IMG/VR virus record: IMGVR_UViG_3300046692_000091
Span: 186,001 to 250,000 of that record
DNA length: 64,000 nt
Reading direction: 5' to 3' (one strand)
Positions 12,126 through 24,652 of this stretch are shown here, piece after piece. Position 1 is the stretch's first letter. Every line of letters begins with the position of its first letter. Made by a program: the position numbers and the translations under genes. The notes below the pieces were generated by a model that ran no database searches, was not told the DNA's origin, and worked only from the letters and a program-made list of their open reading frames with translations.

Positions 12126-13385
12126 TTAACCTTTTACGCAGAGAATTTGTTTGAGAGTATGGACGATGTCCACGAGTTGTTCTTGTGCAGACATTACGTC
12201 TTCGATGTTCTTGTAAGCTTTTGGTGTTTCATCGATGACAGAGATATCCTTACGACATTCTACACCAGCTGTATCACGGACATGATCTTCCAGGGTGAAT
12301 GTCTTAGCAGCCTGAGTACGGGACATGACTCGGCCAGCTCCGTGTGAACACGAGCAGAAAGAATCACGGTTACCTTTACCACGGACGATGAAAGACTTAG
12401 CGCCCATCGAACCAGGGATAATCCCGAGTGTACCTTTATCTGCGTTCACTGCACCCTTACGAGTTACCAGAACGTTGTTACCGAAGTGGCGTTCTTCTGA
12501 TACGTAGTTGTGGTGGCAGTTGATGGCCGACATATCGGAATCGATTGGCAGACCTAGAGTACGGTGGATAGCACCAAGAGTAGCATGCATCATGATCGAA
12601 CGGTTAAGTGCAGCGAAGCGTTGTGCCCAGGACACGGCTTCGATGTAGTCGTTGTAATATTGCGAACCTTCGGGGAGGTAAGCGAGATCACCATCTGGCA
12701 GATGAATGAAGAAACGTTTCATTTCTTCTTTTGCTTTCGAGATAAAGTAAGTACCGATTGCGTTACCGATACCACGAGAACCAGAGTGCAGCATCACCCA
12801 CACTTGATCGGATTCATCCAGACAGATCTCGATGAAGTGGTTACCTGTACCGAGAGTACCTACATGGTTCCATGCACGAGCTGCAGCTTTCGCCAACTTA
12901 GGATGACGTTCTACAATACGTTCCAGATGCTTACGCAGTTTCTCTGCTTCATCACGGATAGCTTGAGATTGGTGAGTGAACACGGATACCGTACCAAATG
13001 CACCACGATCGTTCTTCCCACCGTTGTCAGTACGGCCATGAGGCACTGAGGCTTCGATAGCGGCACGCAAATGGCCAAGAGAGGTCGGTAGTGCTGTGGA
13101 CTTAAAAGTAAGGCGCTGCGCAGCCATACCACAACCGATATCAACACCTACTGCGGCTGGAATGATTGCGCCTTTAGTAGCAACCACAGAACCCACTGTT
13201 GCACCTTTACCCAAGTGTACGTCGGGCATCACAGCAATGTGCGAATAGATGAATGGGAGGGCAGCAATGTTCTTGAGTTGAGAAATTGCTTCTTTCTCTA
13301 CTGGTACGCCAACGGTCCAGCCTTTGATTGGTTTAGAACCTGGTTCTACTGTATCACCAATCAGTTCAAATGTTTTCTGTTTCAT
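12126..13385 (-). CDS. rtcB: RtcB family 3'-phosphate RNA ligase
   Basis: Motifs MPDVHLGKGATVGSV, VGVDIGCG, GTLGTGNHFIE, MLHSGSRG, CHHNY, IPGSMG, SCSHGAGR, DETPKAYK. Confidence 0.97.
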   Translation of the reverse strand: MKQKTFELIGDTVEPGSKPIKGWTVGVPVEKEAISQLKNIAALPFIYSHIAVMPDVHLGKGATVGSVVATKGAIIPAAVGVDIGCGMAAQRLTFKSTALPTSLGHLRAAIEASVPHGRTDNGGKNDRGAFGTVSVFTHQSQAIRDEAEKLRKHLERIVERHPKLAKAAARAWNHVGTLGTGNHFIEICLDESDQVWVMLHSGSRGIGNAIGTYFISKAKEEMKRFFIHLPDGDLAYLPEGSQYYNDYIEAVSWAQRFAALNRSIMMHATLGAIHRTLGLPIDSDMSAINCHHNYVSEERHFGNNVLVTRKGAVNADKGTLGIIPGSMGAKSFIVRGKGNRDSFCSCSHGAGRVMSRTQAAKTFTLEDHVRDTAGVECRKDISVIDETPKAYKNIEDVMSAQEQLVDIVHTLKQILCVKG

Positions 13386-13449
13386 ATAAAGCCTCACGCG
13401 GATGGAAAGAGGAATTGTTACATACACTGACTTTGCCAGTATTATTAAA

Positions 13450-13477
13450 CGGCATAAGGGTTCCCCGGAGGGAACCC
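13450..13477 (-). terminator. hairpin terminator-like element
   Basis: Minus strand GGGTTCCC-TCCG-GGGAACCC-TTATGCCG. Confidence 0.75.
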
Positions 13478-13491
13478 GAATACTTACAGGA

Positions 13492-13809
13492 CTACTTGTT
13501 ACTCAGATGGCATTGAAGATCTGCCATGACGTCGTCCGCAACCTTACGTCGCCCTAACATTCCTGTTAGTTCTTCAAGGGTGCATTCTTCAGGGTCCCAT
13601 TGACCTTCTAGTCCCATACAGGAGCAGTGTGATCCATGGACTTCATAGTACTTACCATTCTGTTCGTAGAGCACGTAGGCGGACCCACTGTAATCTTCGT
13701 AAGTATAGTCAGCGTGTATGATAGTTACCCCTTCAAGCTCAGACATCCGTACATCAAAACTCAATGCTACGTCTTCAATATCACCTTCGGACCAATCGTT
13801 GTAAAACAT
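13492..13809 (-). CDS. acidic hypothetical phage protein
   Basis: 105-aa ORF with YSGSAYV and GSHCSCMGLEGQW motifs. Confidence 0.8.
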   Translation of the reverse strand: MFYNDWSEGDIEDVALSFDVRMSELEGVTIIHADYTYEDYSGSAYVLYEQNGKYYEVHGSHCSCMGLEGQWDPEECTLEELTGMLGRRKVADDVMADLQCHLSNK

Positions 13810-13924
13810 GTTCTATACCTTTAAGCGTGATTACGATGCTCGTAATCTTCATTTGCTTATTGCGTATAGTCCTGTATAATGTATCTCTACCAGTATTTCT
13901 TTATCTGGATGAGACAGCATAATG

Positions 13925-14222
13925 AGAACCCTAAGGCCCCCTATGCTTAAGTAATCTACAATACCAATGGCCGGCCTGCTCTATCGCCCACCTATAGGGA
14001 GCGATCATTGGTAAATGTAGCGCCACGAGTTGGCAGTATCTTTCCAGTCACGGACACCACTCATCGGGTGCCTCTATGGACCATCAAGATAGTTGAACTT
14101 ATGACTCGGCATCAGAGAGACTGTCACATCTCTAAGCACCATTCGGGTTGAAGCTTGACAGGCTTCGTTTTGTAGGTCTTCCTCCTTGTGTGTAGTAACC
14201 GCGCAACGCTACACTCTGGTCG
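13925..14222 (-). ncRNA. putative ~300-nt structured ncRNA
   Basis: ORF-free; promoter motif at 14223-14244; helices GTGTAG/CTACAC, AGAGA/TCTCT, GGCACC/GGTGTC, TACCAATG/CATTGGTA. 3' boundary approximate. Confidence 0.6.
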
Positions 14223-14244
14223 TATACTATTACGTTCTCAGTAT
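14223..14244 (-). promoter_or_regulatory. putative ncRNA-associated promoter motif
   Basis: ATACT-gagaac-GTAATAGTATA on the minus strand. Confidence 0.7.
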
Positions 14245-14245
14245 T

Positions 14246-15130
14246 TTATTTCAGGAAAGTACCACAACTTGCTTGTACATCAGTACCAACGCGAGGAATT
14301 AGTTTTACACGTGCATTGGGTAATCGGCGTTTGATGTAACGATGTAAGTAATCGATATGGCCTTCTACTGGTTCACGAGAGTAATGCCCTTCTGGTGGAT
14401 TGTACCGAACGATGTTCCAATTAACCTCTAACTGATATCCATCGATCACATCCAGGATAGCTTTAACATCAGCAAGGTTATCATTTTCATGTTCAATGAA
14501 AGCGTAGTGGATCTTCGGAACTTTGCCTGTGTGCAGCTGCCAGTCTTTGAGGATTGCGAATGCATCTCGTGGGTAACCCGCTTTAGGTAACCAACGTTTA
14601 CGAAACCGATCATTCAATGAGTAGACCGAATAATAAATCTCGGGGTATACCTCTGGATCAGTGAACACCGATTCAAGTGACCGGCGACTAAACTCTTCTG
14701 GCATGATAGTAGATATCAGGAACTTTGATTCAAGTCCATATCTGGCTGCACGTTTCTTTAAGCCACGCAAGATCTCATCGGCATTACTTAGAAAGATCTT
14801 ATTAGCTAAAGGTTCGCCTCGTGCCATGAAGTTGAAATGGACCATCTTAGCTGGATGCTTGTCGGCATAGTATCGTAGGACTTCATCTGCTTGCTGCCAG
14901 AATTCTTCAATCGTGGTATCACGTAGTTTATTCTGACCTGTTGCAGTTAACCAGCACATCCGGCAAGCTTGCTTACAACCTGTCTGAGACGACAAGTAAA
15001 CAATGAAGTAGTCATCAACCCGACGTACATATCGTGCCTCTAGCATCCCTGGGTGATCTTCAAAGCGGTGTTCGAAGTTTACTGATTGATCGAGTTGGGA
15101 TACATGTTGTTTAAAGATTAGATTATCCAT
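14246..15130 (-). CDS. RlmN/Cfr-like radical SAM protein
   Basis: SSQTGCKQACRMC (CxxxCxxC), FMARGEPLAN (MGMGEP-like), C-terminal ASCG. Confidence 0.85.
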   Translation of the reverse strand: MDNLIFKQHVSQLDQSVNFEHRFEDHPGMLEARYVRRVDDYFIVYLSSQTGCKQACRMCWLTATGQNKLRDTTIEEFWQQADEVLRYYADKHPAKMVHFNFMARGEPLANKIFLSNADEILRGLKKRAARYGLESKFLISTIMPEEFSRRSLESVFTDPEVYPEIYYSVYSLNDRFRKRWLPKAGYPRDAFAILKDWQLHTGKVPKIHYAFIEHENDNLADVKAILDVIDGYQLEVNWNIVRYNPPEGHYSREPVEGHIDYLHRYIKRRLPNARVKLIPRVGTDVQASCGTFLK

Positions 15131-15516
15131 TAGCTAATAGTCCCTATTTGCCATCCATCCAGACGTAGTGAGATATAACCTTTTCGACCTTCTTCTACAT
15201 ACACTGCAGTTGGTTCATATGCCCGGTAAGCTTTTTGTCGATCGGTAAACCCATTACGAATATCATGCATTGCCATTTCTAATTTGGAACACATTTGTAG
15301 CGTGCTATATGCGCTGTCTCCACGCATGTCATTGAAATATGGCTGTAGTGCTGATCCATAAGCAACTACGGCTTCATTGATTGGTTGTGGACCTTTGTAC
15401 CGGGTTAGCTCAGCTTCATAGGCATCGAACGCTGCTGTCTGTTTACGTCTAGCTATGCCTTGGTTAAGTCGTTCAACCACTGCTCGTTCGCGTGGCCGAA
15501 ATCTGTTTGGGCGCAT
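15130..15516 (-). CDS. hypothetical protein
   Basis: SD AAAGGA; TAATG-coupled to the radical SAM gene. Confidence 0.7.
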   Translation of the reverse strand: MRPNRFRPRERAVVERLNQGIARRKQTAAFDAYEAELTRYKGPQPINEAVVAYGSALQPYFNDMRGDSAYSTLQMCSKLEMAMHDIRNGFTDRQKAYRAYEPTAVYVEEGRKGYISLRLDGWQIGTIS

Positions 15517-15540
15517 TGTATATTCCTTTTGTATGATTGC

Positions 15541-15570
15541 GGGCATAAAGGCTATCCCGAAGGATAACCC
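15541..15570 (-). terminator. hairpin terminator-like element after tRNA cluster
   Basis: Minus strand GGTTATCC-TTCG-GGATAGCC-TTTATGCCC; the G-U pair forms only on the minus strand. Confidence 0.75.
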
Positions 15571-15595
15571 AATGCGAGGGGCTCTAAGGCCAATA

Positions 15596-15671
<76 letters not shown>

Positions 15672-15676
15672 TAATT

Positions 15677-15765
15677 TGGCGGAAGCATAGAGATTCGAAC
15701 TCTAGGGGCTGTTACACCCGACGGTTTTCAAGACCGTTGCCTTAAGCCATCTCGGCCATGCTTCC
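15677..15765 (-). tRNA. tRNA-Ser(TGA)
   Basis: Class II cloverleaf with long variable arm; loop CT-TGA-AA; CCA. Confidence 0.95.
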
Positions 15766-15780
15766 TGTGTTGCTTTTGTA

Positions 15781-15866
15781 TGGTGCGGACAGAGAGACTC
15801 GAACTCTCACGCCCTAAGGGCGCTGGAACCTAAATCCAGTGCGTCTACCAATTCCGCCATGTCCGC
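15781..15866 (-). tRNA. tRNA-Leu(TAG)
   Basis: Class II cloverleaf; CTGGA-TTTAGGT-TCCAG; CCA. Confidence 0.95.
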
Positions 15867-15868
15867 TG

Positions 15869-15890
15869 TATATTATTACACACCAAGTAT
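15869..15890 (-). promoter_or_regulatory. putative ncRNA-associated promoter motif
   Basis: ATACT-tggtgt-GTAATAATATA ends 2 nt before tRNA-Leu position 1. Confidence 0.7.
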
Positions 15891-15897
15891 TTTTTTA

Positions 15898-16629
15898 TTA
15901 GACTACGCTGGGGGTGTAATTATTGGTGTAACGCACGTAGTTACTAATTCTTACATTACCTAGGTAACGAGGAACGTTATTAGCGTTGCTGTTTAGAGCA
16001 CCTAGGTATAACGTAGACAAGTTAGCGAAGTTACTAGCTGGTCCACTCTGGAAGAAACCAGATAATGTTCCACCTGAAACTCCAGGCTGCATGTCTTGTA
16101 GTACGCCGTTAATATAGAATCTTAGGCGGCGATTAGTATCGCAGGTCATTGCGTATTTAGTGACTATATTCGTAAAGGTGTTGAAGGTAACTGCCGGGTA
16201 ACGACACTCTGACTTCGCTCCACTGTTGCTGTTATCAGAGAACATCAATAGATTACCATAACCGGCATCACCAAAGCGCATGGTGAAACCTTTGAGTAAT
16301 GACGAATCTGTCATATAGAATTCGTTTGTCCAAGCCGTAGCATTACCTGGGCGAAGTTCTGACCACTCGATTGTCCAATTGGTACTAGACAAATCCAAGA
16401 GTGGGTTGAAAGCCATGAATAAACGCGAACCACTACCACCAGCTGTAGGCATAGATAGGGTTGGTTTATTATCAATTAGTGTTGTGTTACTCACCACTGC
16501 GCCAGCGGATATTGTGATGGGTCTATTACTAACAGTCTCGGTCACTGTGGCCATGTCAATATACAGGATCACATCACCTGTTTCTGGCGGGACCGAGCTC
16601 GAACTTGGTGATAGTAGTAATTCATACAT
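15898..16629 (-). CDS. LamG/concanavalin A-like lectin-fold protein, probably virion-associated
   Basis: LDLSSTNWTIEW and GNVRISNYVRYTNNYTP signatures; paralog of 18676..19395. Confidence 0.7.
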   Translation of the reverse strand: MYELLLSPSSSSVPPETGDVILYIDMATVTETVSNRPITISAGAVVSNTTLIDNKPTLSMPTAGGSGSRLFMAFNPLLDLSSTNWTIEWSELRPGNATAWTNEFYMTDSSLLKGFTMRFGDAGYGNLLMFSDNSNSGAKSECRYPAVTFNTFTNIVTKYAMTCDTNRRLRFYINGVLQDMQPGVSGGTLSGFFQSGPASNFANLSTLYLGALNSNANNVPRYLGNVRISNYVRYTNNYTPSVV

Positions 16630-16692
16630 GTTGATTATCCTGGTTATATAAACATATAATTAGGTGATAGTCAAAATCCCCTTTGCATAATA

Positions 16693-16725
16693 CAGCATAA
16701 AGCTTCCCCAAAGGGAAGCACTATG
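16693..16725 (-). terminator. hairpin terminator-like element
   Basis: GCATAAA-GCTTCCC-CAAA-GGGAAGC-ACTATG on + strand, just downstream of tRNA-Leu(TAA). Confidence 0.75.
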
Positions 16726-16727
16726 TT

Positions 16728-16814
16728 TGGTGCGGGGAGCGGGATTCGAACCCAGCGAGCCTGTACAGGCGGCGGCTTTTAAGGCCGCTATGTATTCCGC
16801 TCCATCATCCCCGC
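16728..16814 (-). tRNA. tRNA-Leu(TAA)
   Basis: GCGGC-CTTAAAA-GCCGC anticodon arm; variable arm; TTCGAAT T-loop; CCA. Confidence 0.92.
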
Positions 16815-16827
16815 GTGTAACTAAATT

Positions 16828-17668
16828 CGGTCCCAGCATCCAGGATTCAAGCCCTGGTTATCAACGAACACGGGGTCGTTGGTAGATCGCCGCTGGGCGA
16901 GCTTTTCATCCCAATGTACAGCTTGAGCTGGTCGCGGCATTCCGCTAGAGGTCAAACCGTTCCGAAGGGTCTATCTACTTACTCGCCTTACAACGCTTCA
17001 GAGTGATGGAGGGCAAGTAAAAGAATCGGGGTAACCCACTATTCCCTTGGCAGCGGTCATGGTTTAAGATGACTTGCGGAATAGCTCGTTACATGGGTGC
17101 ACTATAGCGTACACGTCGCTGCCTTTCGGCCTTCTCATCGATTACCAGCCGCAGCTAGTTCTCTGTGTATGGCCCAGTAGCCTCTTTACGGGAGTCATCT
17201 ACTGGGAAGGTTACCACTACAGGACTATCACCTTCTATGGCCTGGTATTCCAACCAGTTCATGTAACCAAGACGGACATCTGATCCGTTGCAGCCGAGTC
17301 GTAACGCTTCTTCGGTATGGCGCCTTAGTAGTCAGGACTATCTGACCTTTGGGGTATCATGAGTACGGGCTTCGAGTTTCCCTGATATTCCACTATTCTA
17401 GTCTTTTGTGGAACGTCATTGGGTATCATTCGTAGATCTATACAAGTGTAACTCTGTGCCCTAGTCTGAGGATTAATCAGACACCTGTATTGATCCGAGC
17501 CTATCCCTTCCAGGCTAGGTCTTCACACTCCCACTTCTGGGGGAATGCGTATGTAAAAGTTTGATGGAACGATCCTCTACCTTCATCTATTCGGACTTAG
17601 GCGACCTTTTCAGCACAGTGGGGTGGAGTGCACTTACCCAACATCCTACCATGTCTTTCACATGCTCT
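16828..17668 (-). ncRNA. putative ~850-nt highly structured ncRNA
   Basis: No credible ORF; more than 10 visible helices, a GAAA tetraloop, a repeated loop motif; G-U pairs favour the minus strand. Boundaries approximate. Confidence 0.7.
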
Positions 17669-18343
17669 TTATTCGTGCGTAGTAGACAGCTCAGAGATAA
17701 TGCAGATCGAACCATCTTCAACCGGAGTGGTATCGGAGTAATCAACCTGATTGTAAACACCACCATGGAACTGGAAGGTTTCATATTTCCACGAACTATC
17801 TAGCTTCAGCACTGGGCAGACTGACTTACGACCTTGGCAAAGCACTGACGCCGATACGGAACCAGCAGCTGTGACATGTAAGCTAATCTTGAATGGTACA
17901 CCCAATGGAACGTCTTCTATTAGTGTAAAGTTGTTTATTAGTGCGTCATCGAAGTTAGCTCGGAAACCAGCTGTGATCTTCCCTTTATTCCAGAAGACTT
18001 TCAGTGGCGGAGTTGTAGCATCTTTGACATGGACTTGTGCAATTACCACTTTCTTAGCCGAGTTGACTTTAGTAACAGTCATCTCTTGGCGAGACCAGTG
18101 ATGTGCTGCGCTAGTAAGAGACCAATAAGCTGGTTCTTTCCATTCACAGCGTGTGCGATGTGTACTTTTGCTGGACGCCCCTAATGTGGGCGCAGAGAGT
18201 TGAATAGAACCGTCTTCCAATTGACTGACCACTTCTGGACATCTTACCAAGGCTTCCGAACCGAGGAGCTCCAATGCAACCGGATTCTCATCAGAGACCG
18301 GTAATGGAGTAGCAATCAAATAGTTACTGATATCAACGAACAT
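17669..18343 (-). CDS. polysaccharide lyase family 7 (alginate lyase-like)
   Basis: RTRCEWKE (RxExR-like), IAQVH (QIH-like) and FHGGVYNQ (YFKAGxYxQ-like) in the PL7 order. Confidence 0.85.
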   Translation of the reverse strand: MFVDISNYLIATPLPVSDENPVALELLGSEALVRCPEVVSQLEDGSIQLSAPTLGASSKSTHRTRCEWKEPAYWSLTSAAHHWSRQEMTVTKVNSAKKVVIAQVHVKDATTPPLKVFWNKGKITAGFRANFDDALINNFTLIEDVPLGVPFKISLHVTAAGSVSASVLCQGRKSVCPVLKLDSSWKYETFQFHGGVYNQVDYSDTTPVEDGSICIISELSTTHE

Positions 18344-18361
18344 TTTAACTCTCTTTTGAAA

Positions 18362-18437
18362 TGGCGGGCATCCAGGGAGTCGAACCCCGAACCGACGGAT
18401 TTGGAATCCGTTACTCTGCCAATTGAGCTAGACACCC
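18362..18437 (-). tRNA. tRNA-Trp(CCA)
   Basis: ACGGA-TTCCAAA-TCCGT anticodon arm; G73; CCA. Confidence 0.93.
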
Positions 18438-18444
18438 GAATGAA

Positions 18445-18528
18445 GAAAGGGAACAGGAATCGAACCTGCGTTTCCGGCTTGGTACTTATGGTGGCCACCG
18501 GTGTCCTAGGCCGCTAGACGACCCCTCT
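18445..18528 (-). ncRNA. tRNA-like RNA (Glu-type body) with 18-nt anticodon loop
   Basis: AGAGGGG-TC-GTCT-AGCGGCCT-AGGAC-A-CCGGT-[18 nt]-GCCGG-AAAC-GCAGG-TTCGATT-CCTGT-TCCCTTT-C; no CCA. Confidence 0.7.
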
Positions 18529-18646
18529 CACAAACTTGGTCGGGTTTTTGTTAAACCAGGCTAACCGATATCCCTGGTCCCTATCGAGTAAGCTCTAGGG
18601 GAGTCTTACTCTTACGCTCGTTTGGAGACTTAACGACAGTCTCTCG

Positions 18647-18668
18647 TATACTATTACACTGCCAGTAT
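18647..18668 (-). promoter_or_regulatory. putative ncRNA-associated promoter motif
   Basis: ATACT-ggcagt-GTAATAGTATA. Confidence 0.7.
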
Positions 18669-18675
18669 TTTGTTA

Positions 18676-19395
18676 TTACAACTCTAGTGGGCCAGGAGTA
18701 TAGTTACGTGTATATCTAGCGAAGTTACTAAGTCGAACTCTACCGTGATGCCCAGGAACAGCACGTACCGAACTACCGTTCGAATCACCAAATATAAGCG
18801 AGGTGATATTGATCAGTGCTGTTGGTGTAATCGTTTGCATAATGTAGGTTCCATTAGCTGCACCCTTAGCCAATGGGAGTCTCTGTCCATTACGGTAAAT
18901 AAAGATCTGACCATTCTTACATACAAATGCCCATCTACTCAAATTACTAACTAAGGCAGCTTTAGTGAATTGGGTATTATAACAATCGGCTGGTGCAGAG
19001 GCTGTGTTATCCCCCAAATGGAGTCTGTCTAAGAAACCAGAGTCACCATACCTGAAGAATAGTCCACGGCCAGCTGTTGAACTAGTCATTGAAAATTCAA
19101 GGGCATAGGCAGTAGGGGCGGTGTCGTTTATAGATGACCATTCTAATGTCCAGTTTATTGCACTTAAGTTGAGAGGGGCTGCAAATGTCATCACCTGTTT
19201 AGCTGCAACCGTTGGGTATTGCATACTGCCTTGCCCATCGATTAAATACCCAGCGTCAGCTATTGCTCCACCGGTATTGTTGGTGACGGTACCTAACCCA
19301 GATAGATCGGTGGCGGTAACTGGATCATACAAGAATAACACATCCCCTGTGTCCTCCACTGGTAAACTACCCCCAGCTAATAATGCCTCATACAT
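18676..19395 (-). CDS. LamG/concanavalin A-like lectin-fold protein, probably virion-associated
   Basis: LNLSAINWTLEW and GRVRLSNFARYTRNYTP; paralog of 15898..16629. Confidence 0.7.
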   Translation of the reverse strand: MYEALLAGGSLPVEDTGDVLFLYDPVTATDLSGLGTVTNNTGGAIADAGYLIDGQGSMQYPTVAAKQVMTFAAPLNLSAINWTLEWSSINDTAPTAYALEFSMTSSTAGRGLFFRYGDSGFLDRLHLGDNTASAPADCYNTQFTKAALVSNLSRWAFVCKNGQIFIYRNGQRLPLAKGAANGTYIMQTITPTALINITSLIFGDSNGSSVRAVPGHHGRVRLSNFARYTRNYTPGPLEL

Positions 19396-19434
19396 GACGG
19401 TGTGTCCTTTGGTTTATCAATTCAAACTATTGGG

Positions 19435-19460
19435 CGACATAAGAGTAGCCGAAGCTACTC
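19435..19460 (-). terminator. hairpin terminator-like element
   Basis: Minus strand GAGTAGC-TTCG-GCTACTC-TTATGTCG. Confidence 0.75.
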
Positions 19461-19653
19461 ATCCATAAAGAGTTCCCCAGTTAACAACTTTATTCAGTTG
19501 TTCTTGAGTAGGGATTTTATCTCTGACTCGTTGCTCGCATTCTTTATCGAATTGTTCCATTCTGATACGTGCTTCTTTGAGCCTTTCTTTTTGTTCATCT
19601 GTCAGTGGTTCTAATGCGTTACGTGAGAGTGCTATTAAAGTAGCCAGGCTCAT
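19459..19653 (-). CDS. microprotein paralog 5 (64 aa)
   Basis: ATGA-coupled; MSLATLI...PTQEQLNKVV. Confidence 0.75.
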   Translation of the reverse strand: MSLATLIALSRNALEPLTDEQKERLKEARIRMEQFDKECEQRVRDKIPTQEQLNKVVNWGTLYG

Positions 19654-19832
19654 ATCGTGATCAGCCTATTCAAGAGTTCTTGTGAAGGAGCCGTACGCGC
19701 GTGGCGCTCGTCAATCTCTTTGTTATATCCCCGCATTCTTTCATAGAACGCTATATTCCTTTTCTCACGCTCTTCGGCAGATATTGGTTCAGCTCTTTTA
19801 TTAGCCAGATCTATTAAAGCTTTCAGGCTCAT
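19650..19832 (-). CDS. microprotein paralog 4 (60 aa)
   Basis: ATGA-coupled; MSLKALI...PSQELLNRLITI. Confidence 0.75.
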   Translation of the reverse strand: MSLKALIDLANKRAEPISAEEREKRNIAFYERMRGYNKEIDERHARTAPSQELLNRLITI

Positions 19833-19996
19833 AATGAGATTACTCTGTTTAAGAGTTCTTCTGTAACTACTGAGGCTTTCCATTCCTTGGATAACCGGAT
19901 GTTAGTCTGTCTCATTCTTTCTTGGGCAACGGAAAGGCTTTCTTCATGTGTACCATTGCGCGTACGAGCATCTTCGATGAGTTGTTCAAGTGTCAT
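19829..19996 (-). CDS. microprotein paralog 3 (55 aa; not in ORF track)
   Basis: MTLEQLIEDARTRNGTHEESLSVAQERMRQTNIRLSKEWKASVVTEELLNRVISL; ATGA-coupled on both sides. Confidence 0.75.
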   Translation of the reverse strand: MTLEQLIEDARTRNGTHEESLSVAQERMRQTNIRLSKEWKASVVTEELLNRVISL

Positions 19997-20160
19997 AACG
20001 TACATCTCTTAGCTAAAAGTTCAGGGGTAACTTTCTGCTTCTCGAAGTCTTCAGCACACCGCTTATTAAAAGCAGCCGAACGTTTAGCATGGGCTGCCAT
20101 GCGTTCTTCTTTAGTGCCCATGCTATCTCTTACAGCTTTACACAGTGCCTCTAGACTCAT
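19993..20160 (-). CDS. microprotein paralog 2 (55 aa; not in ORF track)
   Basis: MSLEALCKAVRDSMGTKEERMAAHAKRSAAFNKRCAEDFEKQKVTPELLAKRCTL; ATGA-coupled. Confidence 0.75.
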   Translation of the reverse strand: MSLEALCKAVRDSMGTKEERMAAHAKRSAAFNKRCAEDFEKQKVTPELLAKRCTL

Positions 20161-20342
20161 AACGTACACCTTTTGTTCAAGATCTCAGGAGTCATTTGTT
20201 GATTTTTCAACTGTTGCTCCAGCCTCTGGTCCAGTTCAGACATATATTTCTTTTGATACTCTTGAAACTCTACCTGTGTCATACCCATAGCCGATGCAAT
20301 CCGATCTGCCATTCGTTCAATTAATCCCGGTGTCATTGCCAT
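20157..20342 (-). CDS. microprotein paralog 1 (61 aa)
   Basis: Ends MTPEILNKRCTL; TAATG-coupled to the upstream gene. Confidence 0.75.
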   Translation of the reverse strand: MAMTPGLIERMADRIASAMGMTQVEFQEYQKKYMSELDQRLEQQLKNQQMTPEILNKRCTL

Positions 20343-20605
20343 TAATCCACCTGTATCTGTACATAGACTCTTGTCACACCATGCACGAAGTCATAGTTGC
20401 TTACGTACTGTGCTTCATTCAAAGGCTTAGCACTGATCCATACTTGGATGATATCCTGTCCACACTTACGTAGGATCTTAGATACACGGTTCTGGATACG
20501 TCTACGACCTACTGCAGATATCTTAGGGAACTCACGCTTTAACATGAGTACCATGCGTTCATGGCATTCTTTGCCACGCTGTACTTCTGATGGGGTTCTA
20601 TGCAT
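20342..20605 (-). CDS. small basic hypothetical protein
   Basis: Likely ATG 20605 (TAATG overlap); track ORF 20342..20650. Confidence 0.65.
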   Translation of the reverse strand: MHRTPSEVQRGKECHERMVLMLKREFPKISAVGRRRIQNRVSKILRKCGQDIIQVWISAKPLNEAQYVSNYDFVHGVTRVYVQIQVD

Positions 20606-20859
20606 TAGTGCATCACCATTGAACCTTCGAGATGGCAAGCGCAACGACACAGTTGTGTTTCTGTATCGCCATCAACCACAATCAACAGACTAGGATAGAA
20701 TTGACGTTTAGCAAAAACTAGCTTACCCCATTCTGATTCTGTATCATCTCGTTCAATAGCTACAGCCGTTTCACTAAAGTTCTTTTTTAGGAAAGCTTCA
20801 CTCAGTGTGTGATCTTTATTGAGGTATTGACGTTCACTTCTTGCGCAACAAGGTACCAT
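20605..20859 (-). CDS. hypothetical protein
   Basis: SD AGAGGA; ATG 20859. Confidence 0.6.
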   Translation of the reverse strand: MVPCCARSERQYLNKDHTLSEAFLKKNFSETAVAIERDDTESEWGKLVFAKRQFYPSLLIVVDGDTETQLCRCACHLEGSMVMH

Positions 20860-20883
20860 TGGATATTCCTCTTTTGGATTAGA

Positions 20884-20916
20884 CAGCATAAAGGAGATCC
20901 GAAGATCTCCTTTATT
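20884..20916 (-). terminator. hairpin terminator after tRNA operon
   Basis: AAAGGAGATC-CGAA-GATCTCCTTT on + strand; minus strand reads TTCG loop then TTTATGCTG. Confidence 0.8.
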
Positions 20917-20920
20917 GAAT

Positions 20921-20996
20921 TGGCTCCGAGACTAGGATTCGAACCTAGGACCAACGCATTAACAGTGCGCGGCTCTACCAACTGAGCTATCTCGAA
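20921..20996 (-). tRNA. tRNA-Asn(GTT)
   Basis: GCGCA-CTGTTAA-TGCGT; G73; CCA. Confidence 0.93.
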
Positions 20997-20997
20997 A

Positions 20998-21074
20998 TGG
21001 CTCCATGACCTGGACTCGAACCAGGGACACCTTGATTAACAGTCAAGTGCTACTACCAACTGAGCTATCATGGA
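20998..21074 (-). tRNA. tRNA-Asn(GTT)
   Basis: CTTGA-CTGTTAA-TCAAG; G73; CCA. Confidence 0.93.
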
Positions 21075-21231
21075 ATGTACTGGGATGCCGGGCTTTACCG
21101 GATGATCGTTTTATCTAGACTCCCTCTCATGTCTAGCGATGCTTGTATCCCCAAGGATAGCCTAGGCTTGCAGCGAGCTAACGGTTACCCGTTTGGTGCA
21201 AGAGCTGATCTAGTCTACCGATGGAAATTCT

Positions 21232-21315
21232 TTATCTATCAGCGGGTCTTGAAGCCGCACACGGTCGATGGTATTTAGCCAACGATTGTCCTACCGATTG
21301 GACGATGATAGATAA
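21232..21315 (-). ncRNA. degenerate tRNA-like RNA with extended anticodon arm
   Basis: TTATCTATCA/TGATAGATAA closing stem; D-arm GTCC-AATCGGTA-GGAC; 7-bp arm TCGTTGG/CCATCGA; T-like arm GCGG-CTTCAAGAC-CCGC. Confidence 0.55.
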
Positions 21316-21439
21316 TGAAACGTTTACCTAGACAGTTCCCTAATAACTGATTACCCTGCGCGTCAGGTCGTTCGTTTATTAGGTAGGCGTGTATGCGACG
21401 CCTCGTTTTAGTTCTGCTCCTAAGAGCCTTCTGTCTAGC

Positions 21440-21519
21440 ACGCCCCTACCGGATTTGAACCGATGACCGATCAACGTATGGTTACCGTCGATTGCTCTAC
21501 CTAGCTGAGCTAAGGGGCG
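21440..21519 (-). ncRNA. tRNA-like RNA (Ile2/Met-type body) with 7-bp anticodon stem and 9-nt loop
   Basis: CGCCCCT-TA-GCTC-AGCTAGGTA-GAGC-A-ATCGACG-GTAACCATA-CGTTGAT-CGGTC-ATCGG-TTCAAAT-CCGGT-AGGGGCG-T; no CCA. Confidence 0.75.
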
Positions 21520-21523
21520 ACAA

Positions 21524-21608
21524 TGGTGGGTGCAGAAGGATTCGAACCTTCGAAGTCAGCGACGGGAGATTTACAATCTCCTGGGTTTGGCCACTCCCCA
21601 ACACACCC
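21524..21608 (-). tRNA. tRNA-Tyr(GTA)
   Basis: GGAGA-TTGTAAA-TCTCC; long variable arm; CCA. Confidence 0.93.
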
Positions 21609-21853
21609 GTATCAGCAGCAGCCGGTCCACCCGGTCATGAGGTTTTAACTCTTCTGTGCTGATAGTAAAACATTTGAAATTAGCTATGGAGAAAGGCGAC
21701 TCGTTTTATCTCCTGACTTGTACCCATGCACCCATTATTGATCCACTGGGCGACTCCTTTAGTGTGGATCGGGCTGTACCTTACCGTCGTTGTAAGCTAA
21801 TTTCAAAACTAACGAGGCAGTAGAAGTCCGAAGGACCAATACCACCTCTAAGA

Positions 21854-21930
21854 TGGCGCAACCAGCGGGACTCGAACCCGCGACCTCTTGCGTGACAGGC
21901 AAGCATTCTAACCAACTGAACTATGGCTGC
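21854..21930 (-). tRNA. tRNA-Asp(GTC)
   Basis: CTTGC-CTGTCAC-GCAAG; G73; CCA. Confidence 0.95.
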
Positions 21931-21933
21931 AAT

Positions 21934-22026
21934 AAACTAGTCGCGCTTTAACCCGCGTAAGCTAATAGCCCTGTTATGGCGGGCCGTCCAAATCAAGGGA
22001 GTTGAACCCGAGTTCTCGACTAGTTT
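21934..22026 (-). ncRNA. four-way-junction RNA with T-like and D-like arms in permuted order
   Basis: 10-bp closing stem AAACTAGTCG/CGACTAGTTT; arms GGG-TTCAACT-CCC, GCCC-9nt-GGGC, CGC-GGGTTAAA-GCG. Confidence 0.55.
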
Positions 22027-22033
22027 AAAAAAA

Positions 22034-22111
22034 TGGGGTGAGCTACGGGTCTCGAACCCGTGACCTCCAGGGTCACATCCTGGCACTCTAACCAACTGAG
22101 CTAAGCCCAAC
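22034..22111 (-). tRNA. tRNA-His(GTG)
   Basis: CCAGG-ATGTGAC-CCTGG; G-1:C73; CCA; atypical A32 and U1.C72. Confidence 0.85.
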
Positions 22112-22175
22112 ACTAAACACTGAGACCAATTGTCTTCCGATGCAATCAAGCTTCGTACTACGCCAATCAGTCTCG

Positions 22176-22197
22176 TATACTATTACACAACAAGTAT
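22176..22197 (-). promoter_or_regulatory. putative ncRNA-associated promoter motif
   Basis: ATACT-tgttgt-GTAATAGTATA upstream of the His-Asp-Tyr-Asn-Asn operon. Confidence 0.7.
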
Positions 22198-22283
22198 TAT
22201 TTTACTTTTGGGCAAAGACAACTGTGATTGGGCTGCACTGTTGCGCTGACCCAACCACATATAGTTGTATATAAATCAATTAC

Positions 22284-22766
22284 TTAGTCGAAGAACTTAC
22301 CGGTATGGATATCGTAATGTGACTCAGCAATCCATTTCCAATCAGGCCAACGTTCACGGAAGGCTGCACGAGCTACTACCATCTCTTCTGGAGTCAGTAC
22401 GATGTCATGTTGGATATCTTTGTTCCATGGGAGCTGACTGAATCTACCGGACGATTTGTGGTAGAATAGATATTCCCCACTATCAACAGGCATTGCTACG
22501 GTATTGTTAGGACCCGGCTTAACTGGCTTCTCTACCTTCGGTTTCGGTTTGCCACCCGGTACCTCCACCAACATGAAGACTGTTTGTTTTCGAACGTACG
22601 GCGTGTTGGAAATGAAGTCACTTAGGTTTGGTATGAATCCTGAGCCCGAGAGGCCGTCCAGTTCACTGCTGCTGCAAGCTGAGGTAAGTCCTCGAAGATT
22701 AACGCGTTGTACTTGGACAGCAATTTCTTGATCTGTGCGTTCGACTTGAGTTGATGCTCGTTCCAT
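22284..22766 (-). CDS. hypothetical protein with tail-tube-like N-terminal fragment (start uncertain)
   Basis: Open frame; the 5' part overlaps the upstream gene by about 145 nt. Confidence 0.55.
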   Translation of the reverse strand: MERASTQVERTDQEIAVQVQRVNLRGLTSACSSSELDGLSGSGFIPNLSDFISNTPYVRKQTVFMLVEVPGGKPKPKVEKPVKPGPNNTVAMPVDSGEYLFYHKSSGRFSQLPWNKDIQHDIVLTPEEMVVARAAFRERWPDWKWIAESHYDIHTGKFFD

Positions 22767-23041
22767 GTAAATCCCTCTACTTCCATAAACATGACAAACA
22801 AAGGCTTTTCGGATTCGATAGCCAGTTCTGTAAGTTCTGCTACCGAATACATCCCGATAGCAGCAGGTGTAATAACGAAGACGTTAGCTGAAGCTTCTTC
22901 TTTAGCTCGATCTTCACGAGCCGCATCTTCTGGTTTCCAGTCTGCAACTACTGGATTGAAGTAAGGGACAGTCAGCAAAGGAATCAATTGACTCCGATAG
23001 TCAGGACCAGCGCAGGTACCACCTAGAAATACTTCACTCAT
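22622..23041 (-). CDS. nucleoside 2-deoxyribosyltransferase-like protein
   Basis: VFLGGTC...YFNPVVADW...VITP..IGMYSVAE pattern of the NDT-like family. Confidence 0.7.
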   Translation of the reverse strand: MSEVFLGGTCAGPDYRSQLIPLLTVPYFNPVVADWKPEDAAREDRAKEEASANVFVITPAAIGMYSVAELTELAIESEKPLFVMFMEVEGFTWNEHQLKSNAQIKKLLSKYNALIFEDLPQLAAAVNWTASRAQDSYQT

Positions 23042-23161
23042 CGCTTAGTCACTCGAAAGCCTTTAGCCCATAAATCGACTCGGAAGAAACCACGGTGCTT
23101 ATTAAGGCCACCGCCTACTCGAATCATTTCATTGCCGGCTTCATTGGTTAGGGGGAAGACT

Positions 23162-23677
23162 TCAAGATGTTCGTTGAAGAGATCCCGGATTGGATTGATT
23201 AATAGGTCCACGTTCTAGCTCCGCTTTCTTTGGTTTGACAACCGGTTTAGTCGGTCGTTTAAAGACACGGTAAGCATCGACACCAACTTGGATAACATTA
23301 CGTCTCCAAGCAGCGACTTCCAGAACGCGCATCGCTTCGTATAGAATGCGATCAATTTCTGCTCTGTCGATCTTTACCTGTGTAGGTACACCATTGATGA
23401 CCTGGGTAATTTCGTATCGTTCGCAGAGGAAGTCGTGTAACGTAGTAGCCTGAGAGTATTCCCCTAGCACTGGAATCAGTAGTTGGAATAGGAATGGAAC
23501 AGAAGCACCATCCGTCAGAAAGCCAGTAGGGATATCGACGTACTTATCGGAATCTTCATGTCCGATGTAATAACGAAAACCAGGAACAGCACGGTAATAG
23601 GGCTTACCTAAGATACGGCTGGCTTCTGGATCGAATGTTAATTGTTCTTTCGCTGTGAATCGAGTAAATGTACTCAT
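23162..23677 (-). CDS. DUF1353 family phage protein
   Basis: PTGFLTDGASVP...ATTLHDFLC...DRILYEAM. Confidence 0.85.
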   Translation of the reverse strand: MSTFTRFTAKEQLTFDPEASRILGKPYYRAVPGFRYYIGHEDSDKYVDIPTGFLTDGASVPFLFQLLIPVLGEYSQATTLHDFLCERYEITQVINGVPTQVKIDRAEIDRILYEAMRVLEVAAWRRNVIQVGVDAYRVFKRPTKPVVKPKKAELERGPINQSNPGSLQRTS

Positions 23678-23686
23678 TGTAATTCC

Positions 23687-24619
23687 TTAGAGACTGAATT
23701 CCCAAGCATCTGTTTGACCAGTGCCAGTTTTAATACCGCCGAAATAGAACATGCGATTACCCATGAATCCTGACCCGCCCATACCACGAGCTGCACCGGC
23801 ATTGGCTGCTAAAGCCGTCCATGTGTTAGTTCCAGGAGTGTAGTAATTAGTTCCGGCATAAGGGCCACCACCACTGATAATACCCCACAGTGAGATCAGA
23901 CGATTGTCAAAGGAATGGAAGCAACGACGGCAGCCATAAGCTGCAGGCATATCTGCTAGAGGGGACATTACTCCATTCGTGGTATCGTAAACGTACATCT
24001 TGTTAATGTATACGCTATTGTTACGCCCACCGATGAAATAGATCTTAGTACCAATTGCTGCAACACCTAAGTCTAGACGAGGCGTCTGGCCTGTAATAGT
24101 TAGCTCTGACCAAGTATCATCCAGTGTGTTGTATTTGTATTGGATGAACTTAGATGGGAGCTCTGGAGAAGCAGTGGTCGATGTCATGCCACCGAAGATG
24201 TAAATGTCAGTACCTACAGCACAACCATCCCCGAAAGCATTCGCGCCAGGCATAGATGCTTTAGTTGACCATGTACCAGCAACGAAGTCATAACACTGGT
24301 TTAGTCCAGTTGCTGCTGAACCAGCAGCATTGTGGCCACCGATCACATACATCTTATCTCCAACTACAACTGACGTATGACCGGATCTTGCAGTAGGTAG
24401 AGCAGGCAAGGCTGTCCATGCTGACCCATTCCAACGAGCGAATAATGTTTGTGGTACACTGGAGAAACCACCAATCCAATACAGTTGGCCACCCCATTGA
24501 ACAACATCATGGTGAAAACCAAAACGAGAACCACCCAGCTGTTTCCAAACAAATGCTTCTAAGTTTAATGGTGCCGCTGGCCCCGGTGTAGTCACCTGGC
24601 TTAATAATTGTTCCCACAT
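23687..24619 (-). CDS. Kelch-repeat beta-propeller protein
   Basis: Repeats LYWIGG, MYVIGG, IYIFGG, IYFIGG, MFYFGG with W near the repeat ends; SD AGGAAG before MWEQLL. Confidence 0.9.
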   Translation of the reverse strand: MWEQLLSQVTTPGPAAPLNLEAFVWKQLGGSRFGFHHDVVQWGGQLYWIGGFSSVPQTLFARWNGSAWTALPALPTARSGHTSVVVGDKMYVIGGHNAAGSAATGLNQCYDFVAGTWSTKASMPGANAFGDGCAVGTDIYIFGGMTSTTASPELPSKFIQYKYNTLDDTWSELTITGQTPRLDLGVAAIGTKIYFIGGRNNSVYINKMYVYDTTNGVMSPLADMPAAYGCRRCFHSFDNRLISLWGIISGGGPYAGTNYYTPGTNTWTALAANAGAARGMGGSGFMGNRMFYFGGIKTGTGQTDAWEFSL

Positions 24620-24652
24620 GTCGAATCTTCCTGATTTATAAAACATACGATA

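What the first reader, a model, noticed from the sequence alone, without database searches (positions are those of the whole stretch)
20921..22197. One operon holds exactly the queuosine-family (GUN) tRNAs: His, Asp, Tyr, Asn, Asn
Seen: between the promoter motif (22176) and the terminator (20884), all canonical tRNAs have GUN anticodons. The other units carry Leu(UAG), Ser(UGA), Thr(UGU), Leu(UAA) and Trp(CCA). Known: His, Asp, Tyr and Asn tRNAs are the Q34-modified set and the targets of colicin E5-type anticodon nucleases. Inference: selection to replace a tRNA class destroyed or modified during infection, rather than codon bias alone.
Basis: partly seen in the sequence, partly recalled or inferred. 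Interest (0 to 1): 0.6.

Follow-up and report, generated by a model that had tools for sequence, protein, structure and literature searches.

The report
Jumbo-phage GUN tRNA and ncRNA operon
A giant Pseudomonas-type phage has one transcription unit holding its tRNAs for His, Asp, Tyr and Asn (twice), interleaved with conserved structured RNAs of unknown function. The tRNA set is real, but relatives show it is not exclusive, and about half of it fits ordinary codon supply.

Summary
Window 20886-22203 (- strand) is one unit, bounded by a phage promoter motif and a hairpin-TTTATGC terminator. Its five canonical tRNAs are His-GUG, Asp-GUC, Tyr-GUA and Asn-GUU twice. The genome's other five tRNAs lie in two further units. 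"Exactly GUN" is specific to this genome, however. The orthologous unit carries Pro-UGG in D6, Psa21, RVTF4 and one metagenomic relative, and Ser-GCU in an Erwinia phage. The conserved core is Asp...Asn.

The unit also holds a tRNA-like gene with a non-decoding anticodon arm and no CCA. It holds two structured RNA families, E2b and E3a, that are better conserved than the tRNAs, show strong covariation and are absent from Rfam.

Against a P. syringae-group host proxy, codon demand explains the non-GUN tRNAs very well and Tyr and Asn well. It does not explain Asp or His. The phage has no Tgt or QueC. All GUN tRNAs keep U33-G34-U35, so none shows evasion of an E5-type nuclease. An RtcB ligase and an RlmN/Cfr-like enzyme lie just downstream and are syntenic in relatives, which points to tRNA damage as a real pressure.

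Verdict: a tRNA supply operon within an RNA-maintenance module. Class-specific counter-defence is possible but unproven.

The parts
22172..22203 (-). Phage promoter motif (AAAATAATACT-N6-GTAATAGTATACGAG) heading unit A
   Evidence: the motif is found at about five sites in the genome, including one in front of each tRNA unit (window 15880, 18658, 22187); it is identical in D6 and Psa21 upstream of their tRNA-His.
22034..22111 (-). tRNA-His (GUG), with encoded G-1 and CCA
   Evidence: 51.9 bits; 76% identical to the host-proxy tRNA-His, with A32 where the host has U32. A U1-C72 mismatch is read from the sequence.
21933..22027 (-). E1: structured element with a 10-11-bp closing stem, a T-loop-like motif, a closed hairpin ending GCCA and a D-arm-like hairpin (a mimic of the tRNA elbow)
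Evidence: fold z = -2.9; conserved in Psa21 and absent in D6.
21854..21930 (-). tRNA-Asp (GUC), CCA encoded
   Evidence: 71.4 bits; 83% identical to host tRNA-Asp, with an identical anticodon loop.
21660..21816 (-). E2b: conserved structured ncRNA of about 135 nt (match to covariance model R1), with a 13-bp closing stem
   Evidence: nine phage copies at 127-186 bits; 96% of cells paired, 14 of 37 pairs with compensatory change, 0 of 500 shuffles as good. No Rfam hit. Not found in 151 Pseudomonas genomes.
21610..21664 (-). E2c: closed hairpin element shared with D6
   Evidence: fold; near-identical in D6.
21524..21608 (-). tRNA-Tyr (GUA), class II, CCA encoded
   Evidence: 48.5 bits; 74% identical to host tRNA-Tyr, with U32 where the host has C32.
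21440..21519 (-). tRNA-like RNA with a non-decoding anticodon arm (7-bp stem, 9-nt loop) and no encoded CCA
   Evidence: (46.3 bits); the ortholog in L168 has identical acceptor, D and T arms but a different anticodon arm. The D6, Psa21 and L173 orthologs have 8-12-bp stems with unrelated loops.
21323..21442 (-). E3a: conserved structured ncRNA of about 115 nt (match to model R2), a three-way junction that starts directly after the tRNA-like gene
   Evidence: six strong copies at 117-141 bits, including phage TPWB-08 next to tRNA-Asp; 18 of 30 pairs compensatory, 0 of 500 shuffles as good. No Rfam hit.
21150..21322 (-). Insertion specific to this lineage. It contains E3b (21232-21318), a degenerate tRNA-shaped element.
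   Evidence: absent in D6 and Psa21; absent in the relative in run X3, present in the one in X2; cloverleaf-like fold, z = -2.2.
21085..21149 (-). E3c: conserved hairpin followed by AUAAAACGA and a second hairpin
   Evidence: (conserved in all three phages).
20998..21074 (-). tRNA-Asn (GUU) copy 2, CCA encoded, U1-A72
   Evidence: 60.8 bits; 88% identical to host and phiKZ tRNA-Asn, with one extra base in the D arm.
20921..20996 (-). tRNA-Asn (GUU) copy 1, CCA encoded, U1-A72
   Evidence: 65.6 bits; 92% identical to D6 AsnA, 91% to RVTF4 Asn, 71% to copy 2.
20886..20913 (-). Terminator-type hairpin abutting TTTATGC
   Evidence: the same signal ends units B (16701) and C (15549) and recurs about 27-30 times in the genome.
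14246..15130 (-). Context: distant RlmN/Cfr-like radical-SAM RNA methyltransferase
   Evidence: TIGR00048 E = 5e-15, far below the curated cut-off; Cfr 9p0p E = 4e-9; phrog_27142.
12126..13427 (-). Context: RtcB RNA ligase (joins 2',3'-cyclic-P or 3'-P ends to 5'-OH ends)
   Evidence: PF01139, 428 bits; orthologs lie 2.5-3 kb from the tRNA region in Psa21, D6 and RVTF4.

Best explanation
Unit A is a polycistronic tRNA-plus-ncRNA operon. It belongs to a roughly 10-kb translation and RNA-maintenance module of a Psa21/D6-like, phiKZ-related jumbo phage (46% GC) from a rhizosphere metagenome.

A phage-specific promoter drives a precursor of about 1.3 kb that stops at a hairpin-UUUAUGC signal. Host RNase P and 3'-end or RNase E-type processing then release (this step is inferred):
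- five CCA-encoding tRNAs (His, Asp, Tyr, Asn, Asn);
- a tRNA-shaped RNA that cannot decode;
- at least two stable structured RNAs, E2b and E3a.

Host synthetases charge the tRNAs. They raise the supply of the only decoders of the NAY codon boxes. Demand for Tyr and Asn, and the share of NAU codons, are higher in the phage than in a roughly 59%-GC Pseudomonas host. Units B and C supply decoders for A-ending codons that are rare in the host.

That all four GUN families sit in one unit is inherited from an older cassette, (His)-Asp-[E2b]-...-[E3a]-Asn, which in most relatives also carries Pro-UGG. The pure GUN state here arose by loss of Pro. The adjacent RtcB and RlmN/Cfr-like genes suggest the module also keeps tRNAs working when they are cut or undermodified.
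For: Shown:
- tRNA identities and unit boundaries.
- All ten canonical tRNAs encode CCA, and the GUN tRNAs keep canonical loops.
- Orthologous units: D6 His-Asp-Tyr-Pro-odd-Asn-Asn; Psa21 His-Asp-Pro-odd-Asn; L173 His-Asp-Pro-...-Asn-Asn; RVTF4 Asp-Pro-Asn; L168 His-Asp-odd-Asn; phiKZ Asp-Asn; Erwinia pEa_SNUABM_9 His-Asp-Ser(GCU)-E2b-Asn.
- Codon test against 486 kb of P. avellanae. GC3 is 0.45 in the phage and 0.70 in the host proxy. Tyr (1.62x) and Asn (1.43x) are the two most enriched amino acids.
- Demand ranks among 40 decoding units: Leu-UAG 1, Leu-UAA 2, Thr-UGU 3, Pro-UGG 4, Ser-UGA 6, Tyr 8, Asn 9, Trp 11.
- Mann-Whitney p = 5e-4 for all nine phage species.
- The NAU share rises in all four boxes (Asp 0.40 to 0.65, His 0.38 to 0.55).
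- Host GUN tRNA genes are dispersed, so the cluster was not copied from a host operon.
- RtcB and the RlmN/Cfr-like gene are syntenic with the tRNA region in relatives.
- E2b and E3a are real structured RNAs.
Against: - Asp (demand ratio 1.09, rank 18) and His (0.92, rank 25) are not predicted by codon demand. Yet Asp is the most conserved member of the cassette.
- The GUN set alone is not significantly high-ranked (p = 0.065).
- The higher-ranked Gln-UUG and Lys-UUU have no phage tRNA, and Pro-UGG (rank 4) was lost here.
- The host is inferred from relatives, not known.
- Genes were called crudely (longest ATG ORFs), and host tRNA copy numbers could not be used because the assembly is a draft.
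- Processing and expression are inferred. No RNA data exist for this phage.
Confidence: 0.5

Rival explanations
1. One reading: class-specific counter-defence. The unit exists to replace, by mass action and with RtcB resealing, the His/Asp/Tyr/Asn tRNAs that a GUN-directed (colicin E5-type) anticodon nuclease cleaves during infection.
For: - The set equals the E5 substrate set, and E5 products are RtcB substrates. RtcB lies about 2.2 kb downstream of the tRNA region and is syntenic in relatives.
- Codon demand does not explain Asp or His.
- Precedents exist: T5 tRNA-Tyr against retron-Eco7, and the proposal for E5 targets.
- E5 domains do occur in the host genus.
- His and Tyr differ from the host at loop position 32.
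Against: - Relatives carry Pro-UGG or Ser-GCU in the same unit.
- U33-G34-U35 is kept in all five tRNAs, and the Asp and Asn loops equal the host's, so the phage tRNAs would be cut too.
- E5 domains are rare (8 of 301 genomes). They sit at the ends of 2,248-3,193-aa polymorphic toxins, which are interbacterial weapons and not known phage defences. None is found in the host proxy.
- RtcB is not specific to any tRNA class and is common in phages (555 records).
Confidence: 0.2
2. Historical cassette. The tRNAs travel with the ncRNAs E2b and E3a as one inherited or transferred block. Membership reflects descent and local gene gain and loss, and the GUN purity in this genome is a chance result of losing Pro.
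For: - The same order, (His)-Asp-E2b-...-Asn, appears in Pseudomonas and Erwinia jumbo phages of different genera.
- tRNA-Asp lies directly upstream of E2b, or one tRNA gene further upstream, in 8 of 9 copies; in the ninth, HPP-Temi, it lies directly downstream.
- The ncRNAs are 84-93% identical, while orthologous tRNAs are 71-79% identical.
- Indels in the unit are frequent.
Against: - Retention of Asp and Asn in every relative, including phiKZ which lacks E2b, argues for selection on those tRNAs themselves.
- 1/252 is low for pure chance, even after allowing for post hoc choice of the class.
Confidence: 0.2
3. Shared-enzyme logic. The tRNAs are grouped because they use common host enzymes. 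These are Tgt for all four, and non-discriminating AspRS plus GatCAB for Asp and Asn. Co-expression would then balance substrates of one pathway.
For: - The host proxy has no AsnRS above the curated cut-off; its best hits are AspRS and LysRS. This fits the known indirect Asn-tRNA pathway of Pseudomonas (stated from general knowledge).
- Both phage tRNA-Asn copies have U1-A72 and tRNA-Asp has G1-C72.
- Asp plus Asn is the universal core of the cassette.
Against: - It gives no reason why co-transcription would be needed.
- His and Tyr are not covered by the AspRS argument.
- The phage has no Tgt or QueC.
- The absence of AsnRS rests on a draft assembly.
Confidence: 0.05

Closest known systems
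Orthologous tRNA regions of Pseudomonas phages D6 (OQ363659) and Psa21 (MK552327)
   Same: Same promoter motif, gene order, terminator, E2b, E3a, odd tRNA-like gene, and downstream RlmN-like and RtcB genes.
   Different: Both carry Pro-UGG in the unit, and Psa21 lacks Tyr. Published accounts list the tRNAs only as evidence of codon preference (PMC11139720) and do not describe the ncRNAs.
Phage T4 tRNA gene cluster with its small stable RNAs (species 1 and 2; from general knowledge)
   Same: Polycistronic phage tRNA transcript with non-tRNA stable RNAs excised by host processing.
   Different: No sequence relation. The T4 set contains no GUN tRNA. T4 repair uses Pnkp plus Rnl1, whereas this phage has RtcB and no Rnl1.
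Counter-defence tRNAs: T5/SP15 tRNA-Tyr against retron-Eco7 PtuAB, and T5 tRNA-Lys against PARIS and PrrC (PMC11555353, PMC11464382)
   Same: Phage tRNA expressed from a strong phage promoter could replenish a depleted isoacceptor. Tyr is one of the set here.
   Different: Those cases involve single tRNAs with a demonstrated nuclease. Here no nuclease is known, and four families are involved.
Colicin E5 / queuosine (GUN) tRNA class (PMC1635277, PMC10264068)
   Same: Exactly the four amino-acid families, all with U33-G34-U35-N36.
   Different: E5 does not need Q. The phage tRNAs show no change that would block recognition, and the phage has no Q-pathway genes.
Salmonella rsr-yrlBA-rtcBA RNA-repair operon (PMC7790460; tRNA-like Y RNAs with RtcB)
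   Same: tRNA-mimicking ncRNAs encoded near an RtcB ligase. E1 and the odd tRNA-like gene mimic tRNA parts.
   Different: There is no Ro/TROVE protein in the phage. The only Rfam YrlA matches are sub-threshold and fall on adjacent true tRNAs.

Membership tests
Canonical elongator tRNA genes | Cloverleaf with a 7-nt anticodon loop, U33, and a score above the Rfam tRNA gathering threshold | tested here: met
   The five GUN genes score 48-71 bits with canonical loops. The sixth gene (21440-21519) passes the score but fails the loop test.
Queuosine / colicin E5 substrate class | Anticodon G34-U35-N36 preceded by a pyrimidine at position 33 | tested here: met
   All five have U33-G34-U35. The determinant is taken from PMC1635277.
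Queuosine / colicin E5 substrate class | Q actually present at position 34 of the phage tRNAs | not testable with these tools
   Needs APB gels or mass spectrometry. The phage itself has no TGT or QueC.
GUN-only operon as a conserved design | The orthologous unit in relatives contains only GUN tRNAs | tested here: not met
   Pro-UGG is present in D6, Psa21, RVTF4 and L173, and Ser-GCU in pEa_SNUABM_9. The unit is GUN-only in L168, L170, L172 and the phiKZ pair.
Codon-compensation tRNAs | The tRNA decodes codons used more by the phage than by the host | tested here: inconclusive
   Met for Tyr (1.62x), Asn (1.43x) and all non-GUN tRNAs. Not met for Asp (1.09x) or His (0.92x). The GUN set alone gives p = 0.065. 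A host proxy was used, not the true host.
Nuclease-evading phage tRNAs (van den Berg et al. 2023) | Anticodon-loop substitutions relative to the host tRNA at nuclease recognition sites | tested here: not met
   The Asp and Asn loops are identical to the host's. His and Tyr differ only at position 32, outside E5's YGUN determinant.
Counter-defence by tRNA replenishment | A host nuclease that depletes the same tRNAs, and rescue by the phage tRNA | not testable with these tools
   Only the presence of E5 domains in 8 of 301 genomes of the host genus could be shown. None is in the phage.
RtcB-type RNA repair | Full-length RtcB domain encoded by the phage | tested here: met
   PF01139 at 428 bits over profile positions 1-426. 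Activity and substrates were not tested.
Any described RNA family, for E2b, E3a and E1 | A match to an Rfam 15 covariance model | tested here: not met
   Across window 14000-24000 at E <= 1, only tRNA, weak YrlA hits lying on tRNA pairs, and one LSU-like segment were found. The same held for relatives.

The most novel reading that the evidence does not exclude
The (His)-Asp-[E2b]-...-[E3a]-Asn cassette is a dedicated RNA counter-defence and repair module. In this reading, two undescribed structured RNA families and a tRNA-shaped RNA with a free-varying anticodon arm act as decoys, guides or cofactors. Together with RtcB and the RlmN/Cfr-like enzyme, they would keep the NAY-decoding (GUN) tRNA class functional when a host nuclease attacks it.
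Probability: 0.12. Interest if true: 0.75.

Novelty: new variant of a known kind. Interest (0 to 1): 0.45.

Why it matters
Phage tRNA clusters are usually read as codon supplements, and more recently as countermeasures to tRNA-cutting defences. This locus lets the two ideas be separated tRNA by tRNA. Tyr and Asn fit supply. Asp and His do not, and a ligase suited to resealing cut tRNAs sits beside them.

Independently of that question, most of the operon is not tRNA. Two structured RNAs are shared by Pseudomonas and Erwinia jumbo phages. They are better conserved than the tRNAs around them and are missing from Rfam, so they are new candidates for phage RNA biology. Culturable relatives (D6, Psa21) make all of this testable.

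Tried and rejected
- Origin by duplication and anticodon switching. Pairwise identities among the GUN tRNAs (about 70%) are at the background level for class I tRNAs. Each is as close or closer to its host isoacceptor. Not supported.
- Copy of a host tRNA operon. The host GUN genes are dispersed. Rejected.
- Phage Q or 7-deazaguanine pathway. No TGT or QueC.
- T4-type repair. No Rnl1. No CCA-adding enzyme.
- Y RNA system. No TROVE protein.
- Phage-encoded E5 nuclease. None.
- Small ORFs in the spacers. None is conserved, and the substitutions are compensatory in stems.
- E2b or E3a as captured host RNAs. E2b was not found in 151 Pseudomonas genomes. The two weak E3a hits lie inside a selenoprotein gene next to a SECIS element and are spurious.
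- Wider E2b family. A 17-mer scan of metagenome contigs gave 78 loci, but only 2 are true copies and the rest are chance matches.
- Expression. No RNA run holds the locus.
- E1 as a circularly permuted tRNA gene. The acceptor-like and D-arm-like parts fit, but the T arm does not abut the acceptor strand. Left as a tRNA-elbow mimic.
- Not used: the large protein searches, structure prediction and alternative genetic codes.
Full report
**What the window is.** The window is bases 186001-250000 of a 314,814-bp, 46.2% GC virus record.
- Its nearest named relatives are the Pseudomonas syringae jumbo phages Psa21 and D6, at about 82% nucleotide identity over structural genes. RVTF4 is next at about 77%.
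- PhiKZ-type phages are more distant kin.
- The DNA comes from a rhizosphere metagenome. Close variants occur in sediment and soil metagenomes, and no RNA run holds the locus.

**Check of the observation.**
- ARAGORN finds 11 tRNA-type genes in the whole genome. All lie on the - strand at window 15596-22110, and Rfam confirms them.
- Between 22203 and 20886 lie, in order: His-GUG, Asp-GUC, Tyr-GUA, an aberrant tRNA-like gene, Asn-GUU and Asn-GUU.
ATACT-N6-GTAATAGTATAC occurs at about five sites in the genome, all between window 14234 and 24793, and one precedes each of the three tRNA units.
- Each unit ends with a GC-rich hairpin abutting TTTATGC. The genome uses this signal about 27-30 times.
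- The operon, its limits and its GUN content are therefore confirmed.
- The chance of all five GUN genes filling the five-slot unit is 1/252. The class was chosen after looking, however, and the layout is inherited, so it is a single event.

**What else is in the unit.** Canonical tRNAs make up only about 30% of the 1.3 kb.
- *The sixth tRNA-family gene (21440-21519).* It scores 46 bits but has a 7-bp anticodon stem and a 9-nt loop, and unlike all ten canonical tRNAs it has no encoded CCA.
  - Its ortholog in a 317-kb metagenomic relative (L168) has identical acceptor, D and T arms but a different anticodon arm.
  - The D6, Psa21 and L173 versions have 8-12-bp stems with unrelated loops.
  - The tRNA "top half" is thus conserved while the decoding end is free to vary. 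It is a tRNA-shaped RNA, not a decoder.
- *The spacers.* An alignment of the unit with D6 and Psa21 shows that the spacers are better conserved than the tRNAs.
- *E2b (21660-21816).* It is 90-93% identical in the three phages and about 84% identical in P. aeruginosa phage HPP-Temi and Erwinia phage pEa_SNUABM_9.
  - A covariance model finds nine phage copies and two metagenomic ones.
  - 96% of cells are paired, 14 of 37 pairs show compensatory change, and no shuffle of 500 does as well.
- *E3a (21323-21442).* It starts directly after the tRNA-like gene and has six strong copies, one in an unrelated 47-kb phage next to tRNA-Asp.
  - 18 of 30 pairs are compensatory.
- *Status of E2b and E3a.* Neither matches Rfam 15. 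Neither has a credible copy in 151 Pseudomonas genomes.
- *Other elements.* E2b, E3a and a third conserved element, E3c, share the single-stranded motif UAAAACGA.
  - E1 (21933-22027, shared with Psa21) looks like a mimic of the tRNA elbow.
  - A 173-nt insertion specific to this lineage contains a degenerate cloverleaf.

**Is "exactly GUN" a design?** In relatives the orthologous unit reads:

| Phage | Unit content |
|---|---|
| D6 | His-Asp-Tyr-Pro(UGG)-odd-Asn-Asn |
| Psa21 | His-Asp-Pro-odd-Asn |
| L173 | His-Asp-Pro-...-Asn-Asn |
| RVTF4 | Asp-Pro-Asn |
| L168 | His-Asp-odd-Asn |
| L170, L172 | Asp-...-Asn |
| phiKZ | Asp-Asn |
| Erwinia pEa_SNUABM_9 | His-Asp-Ser(GCU)-E2b-...-Asn |

- The stable core is Asp...Asn with E2b after Asp. 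His is frequent and Tyr occasional. Pro-UGG is the usual non-GUN member.
- Where D6 has Tyr, 115 nt, Pro, then the odd gene, this genome has Tyr, 4 nt, then the odd gene. The pure state here therefore reflects loss of Pro.
- Host GUN tRNA genes are dispersed (Tyr-Gly-Thr-Trp, Val-Asp, Leu-His-Arg, Asn alone). The cluster is not a copied host operon.
- Identities among the GUN tRNAs are at background level, so there is no sign of birth by duplication and anticodon switching.

**Codon supply test.** I used 486 kb of P. avellanae BPIC 631, a member of the P. syringae group, as host proxy.
- GC3 is 0.45 in the phage and 0.70 in the host proxy.
- Tyr (1.62x) and Asn (1.43x) are the two amino acids most enriched in the phage. 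Trp is 1.30x, Asp 1.09x and His 0.92x.
- I ranked 40 decoding units by phage-to-host demand:

| Decoding unit | Rank |
|---|---|
| Leu-UAG | 1 |
| Leu-UAA | 2 |
| Thr-UGU | 3 |
| Pro-UGG | 4 |
| Ser-UGA | 6 |
| Tyr | 8 |
| Asn | 9 |
| Trp | 11 |
| Asp | 18 |
| His | 25 |

- Mann-Whitney p is 5e-4 for all nine phage species, 8e-5 for the non-GUN ones and 0.065 for the GUN ones.
- The share of NAU codons rises in all four boxes, most for Asp (0.40 to 0.65) and His (0.38 to 0.55).
- Codon and amino-acid supply therefore explains units B and C, Tyr and the doubled Asn. It leaves Asp and His open, and Asp is the most conserved member of the cassette.

**Evidence bearing on the nuclease idea.**
- Colicin E5 recognises Y33-G34-U35-N36, does not need Q, and leaves 2',3'-cyclic-P and 5'-OH ends.
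- All five phage tRNAs keep U33-G34-U35. The Asp and Asn loops equal the host's, and His and Tyr differ only at position 32. There is no evasion signature, so any benefit would come from amount.
- The phage has no TGT, QueC, Rnl1, CCA-adding enzyme, Ro/TROVE protein or E5 domain.
- It does encode a full RtcB ligase at 12126-13427 (428 bits) and a distant RlmN/Cfr-like radical-SAM enzyme at 14246-15130. Both lie just downstream of the tRNA units.
- RtcB keeps this position in Psa21, D6 and RVTF4. RtcB seals exactly the ends that anticodon nucleases make.
- RNA ligases alongside tRNAs have been noted in jumbo phages (PMC7824862). This supports tRNA damage as a selective pressure, but not one aimed at GUN tRNAs.
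- E5 domains occur in 8 of 301 genomes of the host genus, mostly at the ends of very long polymorphic toxins, and not in the proxy.

**A further link.** The host proxy has no AsnRS above the curated cut-off.
- This fits the known indirect Asn-tRNA route of Pseudomonas, which I state from general knowledge.
- Both phage tRNA-Asn copies have U1-A72 and tRNA-Asp has G1-C72.
- Asp and Asn tRNAs thus share one synthetase in this host group. That may contribute to their universal pairing.

**Conclusion.**
- The locus is a tRNA-plus-ncRNA operon inside an RNA-maintenance module.
- The most likely role of its tRNAs is supply of the NAY decoders for an AT-richer phage (confidence about 0.5).
- The GUN grouping is inherited from an older cassette. 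Its purity is an accident of Pro loss.
Asp and His are unexplained by demand, and RtcB is adjacent.
- The idea itself is not new (PMC10264068).
- The clearly new material is the pair of conserved structured RNAs and the tRNA-shaped RNA with a variable anticodon arm. Their function is unknown. I infer that they are excised with the tRNAs and act in tRNA or RNA maintenance or in host takeover.

Noticed in passing
window 16815-17668 (- strand), between the alginate-lyase ORF and tRNA-Leu(UAA): A stretch of about 850 nt with no sizeable ORF on the transcribed (-) strand is conserved in blocks in D6, Psa21, RVTF4 and L168 at the same position (alignment A7). A 55-nt segment (17211-17265) matches bacterial 23S rRNA positions 330-384 at E = 1.7e-9, and the same match recurs in L168. 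It is a candidate large structured phage RNA next to tRNAs, with no GOLLD or ROOL hit.
   Followed up: partly
window 18445-18528 (- strand): A second aberrant tRNA-like gene lies directly upstream of tRNA-Trp in unit B. Rfam tRNA scores it at 36 bits and ARAGORN does not call it. Its anticodon region is irregular.
   Followed up: partly
window 12126-15546 (- strand): RtcB ligase, a 105-aa protein (phrog_8792), an RlmN/Cfr-like radical-SAM protein and a 138-aa unknown protein form a block right after tRNA unit C. It is preceded by another copy of the tRNA-type promoter motif at 14234.
   Followed up: partly
L007:6463-6550 (Psa21), L005:8251-8337 (phiKZ), L168:9812-9896: These relatives carry an 85-88-nt tRNA with a GUU (Asn) anticodon but a long variable arm, which is class II architecture and unusual for Asn.
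   Followed up: no
whole genome; window sites 471, 7271, 9337, 15549, 16701, 20892, 24662, 36924, 45678, 52069, 62044: A GC-rich hairpin abutting TTTATGC recurs about 27-30 times. It is a phage-wide terminator, possibly combined with a TATG-type late promoter known in phiKZ-like phages (that last point is from memory).
   Followed up: partly
window 17669-18343 and 23687-24646 (- strand): An alginate-lyase family protein (PF08787, E = 6.5e-39) sits inside tRNA unit B, between Trp and the long noncoding stretch. A Kelch-repeat protein lies upstream of unit A.
   Followed up: no
window 22034-22111 and 20998-21074: tRNA-His has a U1-C72 mismatch under a G-1:C73 pair, whereas the D6 and Psa21 orthologs have G1-C72 and A73. 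tRNA-Asn copy 2 has one extra base in the D arm. Orthologous tRNAs differ mostly by compensatory changes in the acceptor and T stems.
   Followed up: partly
E2b, E3a and E3c (window 21085-21816): The layout 'hairpin followed by (C/A)UAAAACGA' recalls the hairpin-plus-handle layout of CRISPR repeats and the solitary-repeat RNA anti-CRISPRs (PMC10651486). The resemblance is from memory and was not tested, and Rfam CRISPR-DR models gave no hit.
   Followed up: no
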